Part shown: positions 6,634 through 14,370 of the stretch, piece after piece
How positions within the stretch are numbered: the stretch's first letter is position 1
Layout of the letters: every line of letters starts with the position of its first letter
NCBI GenBank assembly: GCA_028023455.1
Contig: JAQFVV010000003.1
Span: 8,742,001-8,806,000 of the forward strand
DNA from: Epiperipatus broadwayi
Lineage: Eukaryota > Animalia > Onychophora
DNA length: 64,000 nt
Reading direction: 5' to 3'
The notes under the pieces: generated by a model
What the model was told of the DNA's origin: nothing
The model's database searches: none
The model's input: the letters and a program-made list of their open reading frames with translations, nothing else
Translations under genes and position numbers: made by a program

Positions 6634-6870
6634 GATTACAACAACAATAACAACAATAATAATAAAATAAAAAAAATAAAATAATAATAATAATAATAAT
6701 AATAATAATAAAAAAATAATAATAATAATAATAATAATAATAATAATAATAATAATAATAACAACAACAACAATAATAATAATAATAATAATAATAATAA
6801 TAATAATAATAATAATAATAATAATAATAATAATAATAATAATAATAATAATAATAATAATAATAATAAT
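6634..6870 (+). repeat. Impure (AAT)n/(AAC)n microsatellite array
   Basis: Read directly: AAT units interrupted by AAC blocks and A-runs. It explains the poly-L ORF 6636..6968. Confidence 0.95.
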
Positions 6871-8673
6871 AAAGAAAAAATATGCACCAATGGTAGTCCA
6901 GCTGGATTTTGAAAGTGCTTTTGACTCTGTCCCAATAGAAACACTATTGAGTCAGCTAAAAGAAACACAGATACCTAAAACAATATTATATACAATAGGC
7001 AATTTGCTTCTAAATAGAGAAATACAAATCACGCTCAATGGTAGATCCACATCATCATTCAATCCCAGCCAATCAATCCCGCAAGGTTCTCCACTAAGCA
7101 CACTGCTATTTACCTTTTATTTAAATCCACTGCTAGAGCAAATAAATAAAAAAATTCAAGGAATTCAAATACCAAATACTAATACATACATTCCCTGCAT
7201 AGCTTATATGGATGATGTCACAGTGTTTCTAAACTCAAAAAAGCAAATACATATACTACAGGAAATAATAGAAGAATACACAAAAAATTTCAAATTAAAA
7301 ATTAACATCAATAAATCAGTAGCATGGTCAATATACACAGGCAAAACAAACACACAAATTTATCAAGGTAAGCCCAGTAATTTCCTGGGTTTTCCTTTCC
7401 ACTTGGGAATGAGCCAGATGAGAAGGAATATACAAAATAAACTCAAGTTCGAAGCAGAAAGAATCATAACATCACTCTCCAGATCATATCTCTCACTCTA
7501 TGCAAAAGTGTCACTATTTAATCAACTTATAATGACCAAAATAACTTACTACCTGCCAATAATTACTTTTACAAAACAATTTACAAAGTCAATTAACTCA
7601 CTCTGTAATAAACTATTATGGAACAGAAAAATAGTAGCAATTTCTTTAAAGCAACTTAACCAACCAACAAAATGGAATGGCCTTGGACTGCATGCTATAC
7701 ATACTTTCTACACACAAAAAACAGTAAATCTACTGATTCTACAATATTCAGACGTTTTCCAAACATAGAACCAAAAGAGGAAATCACCCCAACGGACCGA
7801 CCCCCACCCACGGACAATTATATAAATACACTATTGACAAGTATTAAAAACATTAAAGATAAAATAGCACTGAAAAATCCAATTAAATATACTTATTGGC
7901 AAATTCATGATTTTCTAACTCAAAGCCAAGAAAACAACAATAGGCTAACAGTACTTAAAAATAGTCAATTACTCAAAAAGTACAAAACATGGTATTTAGA
8001 ATCTAAATTATTTGACTTCATCCTCAAATTGAATTTAAATGCACTACCTACAGCACATTTCATTCGGTTCACAAGATTTTACCTAAATGTTGATCCAACG
8101 TGTGCTTTATGTCACCGGGAAGAAGAAACACAAGAACATTTAATATATCACTGTAAAGGCTTGGAAAAAGTCAGACAATTGATGGTGAATAATTATAGGA
8201 AAAGGGAAACCACAATAGAAAAAATGCTAAAAGCTTTCAATGAAAATAAAATACCTATAATACATGCAGCAACTTTCAGTATATATGCCTTATGGTGTAC
8301 CAGAGGTGCTTTCACTTTAAGAAACAATCCAAGAAGACATCCTAACACATATCACAACAAACTAGAAAAACTTAAGGAAAGGGACAATCTTCTAGCACCA
8401 CCGGACATTTATGCTGCCACTTGGTCTCTATTTAAAATAAAAGCAGCCTTATAATGGATAGACCAAATACAACCTCTGAAAAATGGAAAACTGAAATGAA
8501 CTCATAATAAGAACTGAAATATCTAAAAGGTGTGAACTACAAAAGACTCTAATGGTTAAAAAAACAAAAGTATATTTTCTGTGTTTCAAGATGTATCCTA
8601 GAATATGATGTTTTATACAATGTATTATTTGATAAGAATGTAACCTTTTTTTTGCCTAATAAAGTTTGCTTTG
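6871..8673 (+). mobile_element. 5'-truncated L1/Tx1-like non-LTR retrotransposon (sister family B)
   Basis: ORFs 6890..7768 and 7672..8454 join across one frameshift near 7745-7750 and are collinear with the C-terminal half of ORF2 at 10761..13982: LDFESAFD, SIPQGSPLS, AYMDD, ITPTDRPPP, CALCHREEETQEHLIYHC, NNPRRHPNT. The 3' UTR ends CTAATAAAGTTTGCTTTG directly into (AAT)n. Confidence 0.92.
6890..8454 (+). pseudogene. Frameshifted, 5'-truncated ORF2 (part of the RT domain plus C-terminal CCHC-type zinc finger)
   Basis: Two overlapping ORFs from the track that together match the RT and C-terminal region of the intact ORF2 downstream. Confidence 0.9.
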
Positions 8674-8956
8674 AATAATAATAATAATAATAATAATAAT
8701 AATAATAATAATAATAATAATAATAATAATAATAATAATAATAATAATAATAATAATAATAATAATAATAATAATAATAATAATAATAATAATAATAATA
8801 ATAATAATAATAATAATAATAATAATAATAATAATAATAATAATAATAATAATAATAATAATAATAATAATAATAATAATAATAATAATAATAATAATAA
8901 TAATAATAATAATAATAATAATAATAATAATAATAATAATAATAATAATAATAATA
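8674..8956 (+). repeat. Pure (AAT)n array, about 283 bp
   Basis: Read directly. It separates the two tandem retroelements and explains the poly-N and poly-L ORFs. Confidence 0.98.
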
Positions 8957-9142
8957 CAGGCACCAGAGGTCGCCTCTAGCTTACCGCTCGTTCAGAACGT
9001 GCTTCTCAATCTATTAAAATATCATAAAATATACCGATTACAGGTAAGAGTTTTATATCTCTAATAACTATAAAATAGAAAACTAATAGATTAATTAAAA
9101 AAAGAAGAGAAATACAAAAAGGCAACACAGATTGATTGCATA

Positions 9143-13700: not shown

Positions 13701-13982
13701 GAAAACATTCGTGAAATTATTAGCACTTCACTCAAGGGTAAAAAAATCAATATGAAAACCCTTTTTGACTCTTTTAAAAGGGGTATCTTTGCTGAAATAA
13801 GAATCTGCACATTTTTACTCTATGCTTTATGGTGTACAAGGTGTAATTTCATATACAATTATAATCCCAGAAGACATCCAAACACGTTCAGAAATAAGCT
13901 GCAAACCATACGTGAAAGAGACATGAAGATTACAGATCAATCTAAGTACATTGACACCTGGAATATACAAGAACTTATATAA
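10761..13982 (+). CDS. ORF2p: APE-type endonuclease, reverse transcriptase and C-terminal zinc finger
   Basis: 1073 aa. APE motifs FNVRGLN, IIETK, VYIP, ILGDFN, LIDLVF, LSDH. RT motifs LCPIS, LDIEAAFD, PQGSPLS, AYMDD, FLGF. Zinc finger CNLCHRDSETQNHLFFSC. Confidence 0.95.
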   Translation: MDIKIGVFNVRGLNSPQKIDLLAKWYDIVKPQIMGIIETKIYSGSLINPTDKLNSKGFTAFSNTSDTPSAGTGIIIDKACPFSSFKILHIDAHLLIITFTHKAITLNIAIVYIPPGPTIINRIIQTLNSRFINAMYPMIILGDFNMTYQTFTGKWLHQLSFPMMSGRGFLPEKAVSFNNGRHSSLIDLVFYSPSLHNMICIQLKNSPLSDHAAVLVSLEINFDNRTTINTGRTIRVLLPSRTPEYLFSEVYIYLHKLKNITMDPVQAWCAFTNLLSFNIDHLTRTTTSPTKLLKLMDDTYKKIIGTSQSNLDRPCLMALKKTYQELTNQLKEYISIKKKRLYLNKPHMYTRNFIRWALGHPSQVRVPAAIKVQTEIVYGDFMLERLYILYREKFQRVSSPSLMAFSQDRSENEFKISLKDFIKKIEAMPDSCHPGIDGIPKFVYKHIDKIAAQYMLNLVSYLTKGIYKIQGLNQIMLVPFMKKKQLISNTSNLCPISMCSLGIKIIESVIKDKIEPFILPNLSKMQFAKKESSTGQAAFLFKSTIETVRDNKKYSPVVIQLDIEAAFDMISISTLLKTLQKYSVPNAYLNLLANLLLNREIYVSLNGKTSPPIVPHQSIPQGSPLSALLFTAYINPLIKIIENEFSGIYVPTINDNISCIAYMDDIAIFLSSQKQIPKLLKILNNFTKEYKLTFNMEKSCAWQIFTGNSINKVFKGRPSAFLGFNFYLRHSPMRSLIQKNLIEKVEKTVNSLSKAYLSLYTKMALLNMLVITKISYFTPTIIYTKAFTNKIDSLCRKLFWGKKIISISIKCLRKPLSQNGLGLHSIHVFRIQKTLNIISTCAQKFPYLEIAAKITPTDRPPPLQRYLNTLLTPLLTIHTLNFKPPQAKYKYWEVYQLLHPNQDDVQTPLHINNKQLCHKFKLWSLEPKYFDFLLKINLDSLPTQHFLKYQRNYKDIDDICNLCHRDSETQNHLFFSCSSLENIREIISTSLKGKKINMKTLFDSFKRGIFAEIRICTFLLYALWCTRCNFIYNYNPRRHPNTFRNKLQTIRERDMKITDQSKYIDTWNIQELI

Positions 13983-14304
13983 AAGCACTAACAAAAAAAA
14001 AAAAAAACTATATCTAACATGGATCCTTGTGCCAGTTCTAAAGTCAACTGACACAAACTAGATGCATTCCTGCTTTAATTTAATTGAAGTATATCTAATT
14101 GAATATTATCATATGATTGAGTGATCATCATTGATTTTGTTGAACTTTTTTTTCTTAGAGACTTCTAGTTTGATAATGCATACAGTTACTGATCAAATCA
14201 TTGTACATATGCAGTTTTGTGAAACTAATTTATATGTAAGAACTATGTGTCAAATGTAACTTGTATAACCTTTTAGAATACTAATAAAGTTTATCCTTTG
14301 AAAC

Positions 14305-14370
14305 ATAATAATAATAATAATAATAATAATAATAATAATTATTATTATTATTATTATTATTATTATTATT
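14305..14370. repeat. (AAT)n abutting inverted (ATT)n, a palindromic microsatellite junction
   Basis: About 11 AAT units (14305-14339) are followed immediately by about 10 ATT units (14341-14370). Confidence 0.95.

What the first reader, a model, noticed from the sequence alone, without database searches (positions are those of the whole stretch)
6634..14370. Candidate (AAT)n-microsatellite-targeting L1/Tx1 retrotransposon lineage, stacked in tandem
Seen: two clearly diverged families lie head to tail as (AAT)n, truncated B, (AAT)n, intact A, (AAT)n. All four junctions abut AAT repeats. Neither 3' end has poly(A); both end CTAATAAAGTTT...CTTTG(AAAC) and run straight into AAT. Established: Tx1-group elements include sequence-specific families (Kibi and Koshi at TTC repeats, Keno at U2, Mutsu at 5S, Dewa at tRNA spacers), and TAA-repeat targeting is known for Dong, which uses a different, restriction-like endonuclease. 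Inference: an APE-type family specific for AAT/TAA repeats, which I do not recognise as described. Alternative: AAT is the element's own tail and later copies insert into earlier tails.
Basis: partly seen in the sequence, partly recalled or inferred. Interest (0 to 1): 0.85.

Follow-up and report, generated by a model that had tools for sequence, protein, structure and literature searches.

The report
AAT-repeat-homing LINE retrotransposon lineage
Two related jumping genes (LINEs) sit head to tail inside AAT repeats, and copies across this 5.6-Gb invertebrate genome show that the lineage makes its own AAT-repeat tail and lands almost only in AAT repeats, a target not described for this kind of LINE.

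Summary
The order is an impure (AAT)n tract, a dead 5'-truncated element B, a perfect (AAT)94, an intact 5.35-kb element A, then (ATA)11(ATT)11. Neither element has poly(A).

Sampling across the genome supports AAT targeting:
- 25 of 27 full-length A 5' ends abut AAT.
- 9 of 14 5'-truncated A copies abut AAT.
- 50 of 52 A 3' ends run into AAT-type arrays.
- AAT/ATT arrays cover only about 2% of the window.

Both outer flanks belong to one older repeat. In its other copies the two flanks lie 15-22 bp apart, joined by a native (AAT)3-5 tract. The 7.7-kb stack therefore grew from a short microsatellite seed.

Directly after the body, many copies carry a run whose unit is that family's own last three bases:
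- CAT in C-ending families.
- GAT or GCT in a G-ending family.
- TAT in T-ending variants.

This indicates 3-nt reiterative copying by the reverse transcriptase, so part of the tail is made by the element.

The element has an APE endonuclease, a reverse transcriptase and a C-terminal zinc motif, and it is L1-like. Tx1 membership could not be tested, and the RT tree is unresolved.

The scan noted the same lineage in other windows of this genome, and GTA- and TAG-repeat relatives.

Verdict: a new variant of a known kind, microsatellite-specific APE LINEs.

The parts
6330..6640 (.). Left flank: part of an older dispersed repeat ('H').
   Evidence: at least 40 copies at 85-89% identity. In other copies this piece lies 15-22 bp from the right-flank piece.
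6641..6872 (+). Upstream impure (AAC/AAT)n tract. It grew from H's native (AAT)3-5 tract and is the target remnant on B's 5' side.
   Evidence: 94% matches; paralogues read GATTAC-AAAA(ATA)3-5-TTTCATGC.
6873..8673 (+). Element B: a 5'-truncated, frameshifted copy of a related family. It keeps the RT C-terminal half, the zinc domain, and a 3' UTR with AATAAA at 8658-8663.
   Evidence: The B-type 3' end occurs 313 times in the genome.
8674..8956 (+). Perfect (AAT)94 array between B and A. It is B's tail and/or A's target.
   Evidence: 94.3 copies, 100% matches.
8957..9142 (+). 5' UTR of element A. Full-length copies start at (N)ATAGGCACC...
9143..10483 (+). A ORF1, 446 aa, with CCHC knuckles. 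It is a nucleic-acid-binding gag-like protein.
   Evidence: zf-CCHC, E 0.0016; CCHC/ZCCHC3-like clusters.
10761..13982 (+). A ORF2, 1073 aa, intact. APE endonuclease spans aa 8-214, RT spans 483-725, and the zf-RVT CxxC...H...C motif spans 894-979.
   Evidence: Catalytic E38, D143, N145, D210, H211 and the YMDD motif with D664, D665 lie in invariant columns.
13983..14304 (+). A 3' UTR, with AATAAA at 14283-14288 and the conserved end CCTTTGAAAC.
   Evidence: The motif AATAAAGT-N1-6-CTTTGAAA occurs 6457 times against 307 for the control.
14305..14339 (+). (ATA)11 tail of A.
14338..14370 (+). (ATT)11 tract of opposite polarity. It is absent from paralogues of H and is unexplained.
14371..14720 (.). 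Right flank: the continuation of repeat H, beginning TCATGCAAAG.

Best explanation
A and B belong to a young, very abundant lineage of LINEs (non-LTR retrotransposons) that carry an APE-type endonuclease. The lineage uses an (AAU)n tail in place of poly(A).

Shown:
- Copies are flanked by AAT on both sides.
- All copies in a stack share one orientation.
- The stack in this window sits in what was a native (AAT)3-5 tract of an older repeat.
- The run directly after the element body repeats that family's own last three bases.

Inferred mechanism:
1. The endonuclease nicks the ATT strand of an AAT tract.
2. The freed ...TTA-3' end pairs with the AAU repeats at the RNA 3' end and primes reverse transcription.
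3. Because that duplex has a period of 3, the nascent cDNA slips back by 3 nt again and again. This lengthens the AAT tail. When the slip happens after copying the last body triplet, it writes CAT, GAT, GCT or TAT runs next to the body.
4. The long pure tail then becomes the preferred landing pad for later copies of the same and related families. This produces head-to-tail stacks such as AAT-B-AAT-A-AAT.
For: **Family A is young and probably active**
- At least 43 ORF2 copies at 95-100% amino-acid identity; 23 of the 43 have no stop.
- The copy tree is star-like with a median terminal branch of 0.003.

**3' ends**
- 50 of 52 independent copies run from ...GAAAC into AAT-type arrays. The median is about 210 nt and the maximum 706 nt.

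**5' ends**
- 25 of 27 full-length copies have (AAT)n directly upstream.
- 9 of 14 truncated copies have 59-231 nt of AAT upstream, at scattered truncation points.
- Two more truncated copies sit at short AAT-like sites: L042 at AATAATAATT, and L007 with a possible TAATAT target-site duplication.
- Against a background of 1.6-2.2%, binomial p is below 1e-30 for the full-length copies and below 1e-8 for the truncated ones.

**Paralogous empty site**
- Both flanks of the stack are one repeat family. Its other copies join them through 15-22 bp that read (AAT)3-5.

**Stacking**
- 9 of 52 A tails are followed by a related LINE, all in the same orientation. ORF1 identity is 41-44% and ORF2 identity 40-55%.
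- 2 of 9 upstream arrays are tails of related LINEs.

**Tail made by the element**
- 10 of 52 A copies have (CAT)5-12 between the body and the (ATA)n array, while their upstream arrays are AAT.
- B-type ends: 73 show CAT runs after GAAA and 13 show TAT runs.
- The G-ending family: about 39 of 100 show (GAT)2 to 5 or more and then AAT. Three from a GCT-ending subfamily show (GCT)4. None show CAT.

**Enzymes**
- The catalytic residues of the APE and RT domains are intact.
Against: - No RNA 3' end was seen. AATAAA lies 11-17 nt before the body end, so transcripts may be cleaved and polyadenylated there and not carry AAU repeats.
- Whether specificity lies in the endonuclease, in tail-target pairing, or in both is not resolved by sequence.
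- Two truncated copies (L009, L056) have a long 3' array but a unique 5' flank, so insertion outside arrays does happen.
- About 21% of B-type ends and 34% of all ends sharing the 3' motif have no array.
- One A copy (L015) runs into (ATT)141, the 'wrong' polarity.
- CAT-run copies do not cluster on the copy tree. That tree has little resolution, so inheritance from master copies with CAT tails is not excluded.
- Only exact-anchor matches were sampled, and no allelic empty site was obtained.
Confidence: 0.72

Rival explanations
1. Specificity comes from the endonuclease alone. The APE domain recognises and nicks the (AAT)n/(ATT)n duplex, as in site-specific Tx1- or R1-clade elements. The AAT after the element is then mostly target DNA and the RNA tail plays no part.
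For: - Published view that target choice in sequence-specific APE LINEs is set mainly by the endonuclease (PMC4494074; PMC3812793).
- One copy (L015) joins ...GAAAC directly to (ATT)141 with no AAT tail.
- A polyadenylation signal lies just before the body end.
Against: - The family-specific proximal runs (CAT, GAT, GCT, TAT) cannot be target sequence.
- Two truncated copies (L009, L056) have long 3' arrays and a unique 5' flank.
- Strict strand polarity is explained equally well by pairing.
- This reading does not exclude the best explanation; both could act together.
Confidence: 0.2
2. There is no targeting. Elements insert at random with their own AAT tail. The 5' AAT tracts and the stacks arise later, by microsatellite expansion, unequal crossing-over between tails, or array synthesis at the 5' junction.
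For: - Arrays clearly grow. The native tract of 3-5 units is now 76 units upstream of B.
- Another reader of the scan proposed arrays 'built at the insertion site'.
- Two orphan perfect (TTA)142 and (TTA)152 arrays in the window have no element next to them.
Against: - 93% of full-length 5' ends abut AAT against a background of about 2%.
- 5'-truncated copies abut AAT at scattered internal positions.
- The paralogous empty site already held an AAT tract.
- Stacked neighbours are different families, so they are not products of unequal exchange between copies of one element.
Confidence: 0.06
3. The pattern is an assembly artefact, or one stacked locus copied by segmental duplication.
For: A few hits are local duplicates, for example three B-type ends 3.5 kb apart on C5 and a second copy of the 63.5-kb array flank 11.7 kb away.
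Against: - The 52 A copies have different distal flanks on many contigs.
- Independent contigs from other samples and from a second species carry the family.
Confidence: 0.02

Closest known systems
Kibi, Koshi and crocodilian Tx1 families (Tx1 clade; targets (TC)n, (TTC)n, (TTCC)n/(TTTC)n)
   Same: APE-type two-ORF LINEs found inside one microsatellite on both sides. They meet the same operational criterion for target specificity (PMC4494074; PMC3812793).
   Different: - The target unit here is AAT.
- Clade membership was not shown here.
- Here the tails are very long (median about 70 units) and pure.
- Here the copies stack head to tail.
- Here the copies carry family-specific proximal runs that point to 3-nt RT slippage.
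Dong (R4 clade), specific for (TAA)n
   Same: Same target repeat (PMC3812793).
   Different: From my own knowledge, Dong has a restriction-like endonuclease C-terminal to the RT and a single ORF. A has an N-terminal APE domain and two ORFs.
Drosophila I factor (I clade)
   Same: An APE LINE whose 3' end is TAA repeats and not poly(A) (PMC4122939; PMC3747384). From my own knowledge, Chaboissier et al. 2000 reported that these repeats are generated during retrotransposition; that paper was not held.
   Different: - The I factor has an RNase H domain, only a few TAA units, and no known homing to TAA arrays.
- A has no RNase H hit.
UnaL2/L2 and mosquito SINE 'slippage retrotransposition'
   Same: Tails of short tandem repeats are thought to be extended by template slippage of the RT (PMC3747384, and its reference to Tu et al. 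2004).
   Different: - Those elements belong to a different clade and use different units.
- Homing into the same repeat, and head-to-tail stacks, are not features of those systems as I know them.
Human L1 ORF2p
   Same: It is the nearest solved structure: E 1e-23 over residues 4-824. It has the same APE-RT-Cys-motif order. From my own knowledge, L1 priming is helped by pairing of the poly(A) tail with the T-rich nicked strand.
   Different: - About 25% identity.
- L1 uses poly(A) and a loose TTTT/AA site.
- This lineage uses a trinucleotide tail and a trinucleotide target.

Membership tests
Microsatellite-specific APE-type non-LTR retrotransposons (operational criterion: the same repeat in more than 20% of flanks; PMC4494074) | The same microsatellite flanks the element in well over 20% of copies, on both sides. 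| tested here: met
   5' side: 25 of 27 full-length and 9 of 14 truncated copies. 3' side: 50 of 52 copies.
Microsatellite-specific APE-type non-LTR retrotransposons | An N-terminal APE-type endonuclease with catalytic residues, plus an RT. | tested here: met
   Pfam Exo_endo_phos, Exo_endo_phos_2 and RVT_1. E38, D143, N145, D210, H211, D664 and D665 lie in invariant columns.
Tx1 clade | The RT domain groups with Tx1 reference elements in a phylogeny. | not testable with these tools
   No Tx1 reference sequence could be fetched. The tree with unnamed relatives leaves A+B on a long branch between L1-like and I/jockey-like groups.
L1 group (L1/Tx1) | ORF2 in the order APE, RT, C-terminal CxxC...H...C motif, with no RNase H; ORF1 is an RNA-binding protein. 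| tested here: met
   zf-RVT scores 27.6 bits against a cut-off of 27.5. No RNase H hit. ORF1 has a CCHC knuckle, E 0.0016, below the gathering score. The best PDB match is L1 ORF2p, and L1-EN is the only endonuclease matched. The same architecture occurs in the R1 clade, so this feature is not exclusive.
L1 group (L1/Tx1) | The RT falls inside the L1-like group in a phylogeny. | tested here: inconclusive
   A+B attach on the branch separating 47 L1-like rows from 13 RNaseH/EEP2 rows. There is no outgroup, and the stem branch is long (0.96).
Dong / R4 clade | A restriction-like endonuclease after the RT, and a single ORF. | tested here: not met
   N-terminal APE domain and two ORFs.
I clade | An RNase H domain downstream of the RT. 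| tested here: not met
   No RNase_H family at E up to 0.01.
R1 clade (Waldo, Mino) | The RT and endonuclease group with R1-clade elements. | tested here: inconclusive
   The R1Bm and TRAS1 endonuclease structures were not matched at E up to 1, whereas L1-EN was matched at E 2e-4. No R1 reference was available for a tree.

The most novel reading that the evidence does not exclude
The reverse transcriptase of this lineage works at its tail like a small telomerase. From a seed of a few AAT units it writes arrays of tens to hundreds of units. Most long AAT microsatellites of this 5.6-Gb genome, including element-free 'orphan' arrays, would then be LINE products.

The tail unit, through pairing with the nicked strand, would be what selects the target. 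Sister lineages with GTA or TAG tails, noted elsewhere in this genome by the scan, would each home to their own repeat. That would be a natural, RNA-encoded and in principle re-programmable target code for an APE LINE.
Probability: 0.3. Interest if true: 0.8.

Novelty: new variant of a known kind. Interest (0 to 1): 0.6.

Why it matters
Microsatellite-specific LINEs with APE endonucleases are known for only a few repeat units. How they choose the target, by endonuclease or by pairing of the RNA tail, is still open.

This genome offers thousands of young copies from several sister families that share a 3' end but differ in its last base. The junctions record what the enzyme did: they preserve a 3-nt slippage signature, a strict strand rule, and growth of a 3-5-unit seed into arrays of about 100 units.

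That makes the question testable with one marked element and tail swaps. It also bears on how a large AT-rich genome acquired its long AAT microsatellites. Target choice set by the RNA tail would be of interest for engineered site-directed insertion.

Tried and rejected
I used 35-place anchored patterns that print the flank. These sample only copies with an exact anchor.
- **Naming the clade.**
  - Two word-index searches, one exhaustive HMMER search and two cluster look-ups gave no named Tx1 or L1 animal reference.
  - The best outside hits are about 25% identical.
  - The tools may leave out records of this genome and of genomes very near it (note). The lack of close relatives is therefore not evidence of rarity.
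- **Nearest outside relatives** (L061-L064) end in poly(A) or are cut by contig ends. They say nothing about AAT.
- **Reads.**
  - Only contigs were available, so there is no allelic empty site, no RNA ends and no proof of transcription.
- **Inheritance of CAT tails.** The test for clustering on the copy tree found none, but the tree is nearly unresolved.
- **Orphan arrays.** The two other long (TTA)n arrays in the window are not at the ends of high-copy elements. My first guess of a SINE beside the array at 49.4 kb was not supported.
- **Literature.** Searches for an AAT/TAA-specific APE LINE found only Dong, the I factor, and general reviews.
- **Papers not held.** Two older papers could not be read.
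Full report
**1. What is in the window**

- 6646-6872: an impure AAC/AAT tract.
- 6873-8673: element B.
- 8674-8956: a perfect (AAT)94.
- 8957-14304: element A.
- 14305-14339: (ATA)11, followed directly by (ATT)11 to 14370.

Element A is complete.
- 5' UTR: 186 nt.
- ORF1: 446 aa with CCHC knuckles.
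- ORF2: 1073 aa with an APE endonuclease, a reverse transcriptase and a C-terminal zf-RVT-type CxxC...H...C motif.
- 3' UTR: 322 nt, ending ...AATAAAGTTTATCCTTTGAAAC.

B keeps only the second half of the RT and the zinc domain. It is split between two reading frames and ends ...AATAAAGTTTGCTTTG. A and B are 51% and 41% identical over those two parts. Neither has poly(A).

**2. Family A across the genome**

The window lies in a 5.6-Gb assembly.
- ORF2 of A has at least 43 near-full copies at 95-100% amino-acid identity.
- 23 of the 43 have no stop.
- On DNA the copies form a star-like tree with very short tips.

The family is therefore young and probably active.

Contigs of public runs show the family at very high depth, rising from 5' to 3'. 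It is also present in a second, related organism and in runs that may be RNA. None of that is decisive, because only contigs were available.

**3. The 3' junction**

In 52 independent copies the body ends ...CCTTTGAAAC. In 50 of them it continues into AAT-type arrays with a median of about 210 nt and a maximum of 706 nt. One exception has almost no tail (L007). The other runs into (ATT)141 (L015).

**4. The 5' junction**

This is the discriminating test, because an element's own tail cannot explain repeats at its head.
- An anchored pattern search for full-length 5' ends returned 27 copies.
  - 25 have (AAT)n directly upstream, one has (AGT)n and one has a unique flank.
  - One to seven variable bases lie before AGGCACC.
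- Of 14 copies truncated within the fetched loci, nine have 59-231 nt of AAT directly upstream, at scattered truncation points.
- Two more truncated copies sit at short AAT-like sites: L042 at AATAATAATT, and L007 with a possible TAATAT target duplication.
- Two have unique 5' flanks and one is rearranged.

AAT/ATT arrays cover 1.6-2.2% of the window. The enrichment is therefore extreme: binomial p below 1e-30 for full-length copies and below 1e-8 for truncated copies.

**5. A paralogous empty site for this very stack**

The sequences just outside the stack, 6330-6640 and 14371-14720, are two parts of one older dispersed repeat with copies at 85-89% identity.
- In other copies the two parts lie 15-22 bp apart.
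- An anchored search shows what joins them: GATTAC, a few A, then (ATA)3-5, then TTTCATGC.

The 7.7 kb of arrays plus B plus A therefore sits exactly in a native (AAT)3-5 tract. A short microsatellite seed was enough. The arrays now present (76, 94 and 11+11 units) grew with or after the insertions.

B is dead and its upstream tract is impure. A is pristine. B probably came first, and A then landed in the AAT behind it.

**6. Stacking is general and polar**
- Behind the tail of 9 of 52 A copies lies a related LINE.
  - This is either the 5' end of a family whose ORF1 is 41-44% identical to A's, or a truncated copy with ORF2 40-55% identical.
  - It is always in the same orientation.
- Other recurrent repeats also begin exactly where the array ends.
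- Two of the nine upstream arrays are tails of related LINEs.
- The one neighbour in the opposite orientation is separated by a switch from ATT to AAT.

The rule is that every element's sense strand is continuous with the AAT strand.

**7. The tail is partly made by the element**
- Ten of 52 A copies carry (CAT)5-12 between ...GAAA and the (ATA)n array, starting with the body's own last C.
- Where the upstream flank of such copies is visible, it is plain AAT.
- The shared 3' motif AATAAAGT-N1-6-CTTTGAAA occurs 6457 times against 307 for the control, in many families.
- In B-type ends, 73 of 100 sampled run-bearing copies read GAAA(CAT)4 and 13 read GAAA(TAT)4, the latter with a T as last base.
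- In the family that ends ...TCCTTTGAAAG, about 39 of 100 copies read GAAA(GAT)2 to 5 or more and then AAT.
  - Three copies of a subfamily ending GCT read (GCT)4 and then AAT.
  - None has CAT.

The unit of the proximal run is thus the family's own last triplet. That is not target sequence. It is the signature of copying the last three template bases repeatedly.

A 3-nt slip keeps the earlier cDNA paired only if the template beyond the body has a period of 3. This in turn suggests that the RNA carries AAU repeats. The same slippage, without any mismatch, would lengthen the AAT tail itself.

**8. Limits of the specificity**
- About 21 of 100 B-type ends and 34 of 100 ends with the shared motif have no array. 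They read ...GAAAYATAAA(A) and then unique sequence.
- Some families with that motif seem never to use arrays.
- Two A copies (L009, L056) have a long 3' array and a unique 5' flank.

Insertion outside arrays occurs, and the tail can be delivered there.

**9. What it is related to**
- The nearest solved structure is human L1 ORF2p, E 1e-23, colinear over residues 4-824.
- R2 proteins score 1e-14.
- L1-EN is the only endonuclease structure matched.
- An exhaustive HMMER search of 1.84 billion representatives gives only hits at about 25% identity.
- The top hits share the L1-type C-terminal motif.
- The tools may leave out records of this genome and of genomes very near it (note). The isolation is therefore partly a property of the search.
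- In an RT tree with 60 unnamed relatives, A and B are sisters (support 100) on a long stem. The stem joins the branch between L1-like sequences, including the named plant L1 rows among them, and RNase H / Exo_endo_phos_2 sequences. There is no outgroup.
- No Tx1 reference could be obtained.

'L1-like APE LINE' is therefore justified. 'Tx1' is not tested.

**10. Comparison with the literature**
- Known APE-type microsatellite specialists are Waldo (ACAY), Mino (AC), Kibi (TC), Koshi (TTC) and crocodilian Tx1 families (TTCC/TTTC) (PMC3812793; PMC4494074).
- TAA is the known target of Dong, which I know to use a restriction-like endonuclease.
- The I factor ends in TAA repeats, and UnaL2 tails are thought to slip (PMC3747384; PMC4122939).
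- I found no description of an APE-type lineage homing to AAT.

By the published 20% criterion, family A is target-specific.

**11. Earlier notes of the scan**

Other first readers flagged the same AAT lineage in other windows of this genome, and follow-up agents described GTA- and TAG-repeat relatives. I did not test those.

**12. Verdict**

The target is new for this kind of element and the mechanism class is known, so this is a new variant of a known kind.

Noticed in passing
window 48941-49366 and 63053-63510: Two perfect (TTA)142 and (TTA)152 arrays with no element beside them. Paralogues of the sequence right of the first array lack the array (...GATT|CACTGTTC). The second array is duplicated 11.7 kb further on. 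They could be tail-only insertions or RT-made arrays, or ordinary expansions.
   Followed up: partly
window 14338-14370; also L047 and L054 upstream of A copies: AAT and ATT tracts of opposite polarity abut each other: (ATA)11(ATT)11 here, and (ATT)n(AAT)n in two loci. The ATT part is absent from paralogues of the host repeat. Its origin is unexplained.
   Followed up: partly
window 6330-6640 and 14371-14720: An older dispersed repeat family, with about 720 first-look candidates for each flank piece and copies at 85-89% identity. It carries an internal (AAT)3-5 tract whose length and AAC/AAT make-up vary between copies. Some copies have tracts of more than 7 units that may also be occupied.
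   Followed up: partly
L005, L011, L017, L025 (downstream of A tails); L054 (reverse): A third related LINE family. Its 5' end, CCTGCAGCAAATCTCTGCTGAGG..., starts exactly at the end of AAT arrays, and its ORF1 is 41-44% identical to A's.
   Followed up: partly
L018, L020, L023, L029, L054; L019, L026, L032; L022, L051: Three further repeat families begin right after A's tail array, in the same orientation. One starts with (AATTC)n. They show no protein similarity to A within the roughly 1 kb available. They may be SINEs or long 5' UTRs of other AAT-associated elements.
   Followed up: no
genome-wide pattern hits: Families with spacers AC or TG in the shared 3' motif end ...CTTTGAAACATAAA(A) and then unique sequence, without arrays. 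This may be the ancestral, non-array state of the lineage.
   Followed up: no
window 18706-19195: Telomere-like AACCCT / TAAAGCTAACCC repeats inside a 186-bp tandem duplication, at an interstitial position.
   Followed up: no
L063 1-30: A distant poly(A)-tailed relative from a public contig has (TATG)n directly at its 5' end. This may be another microsatellite association in an unrelated organism.
   Followed up: no
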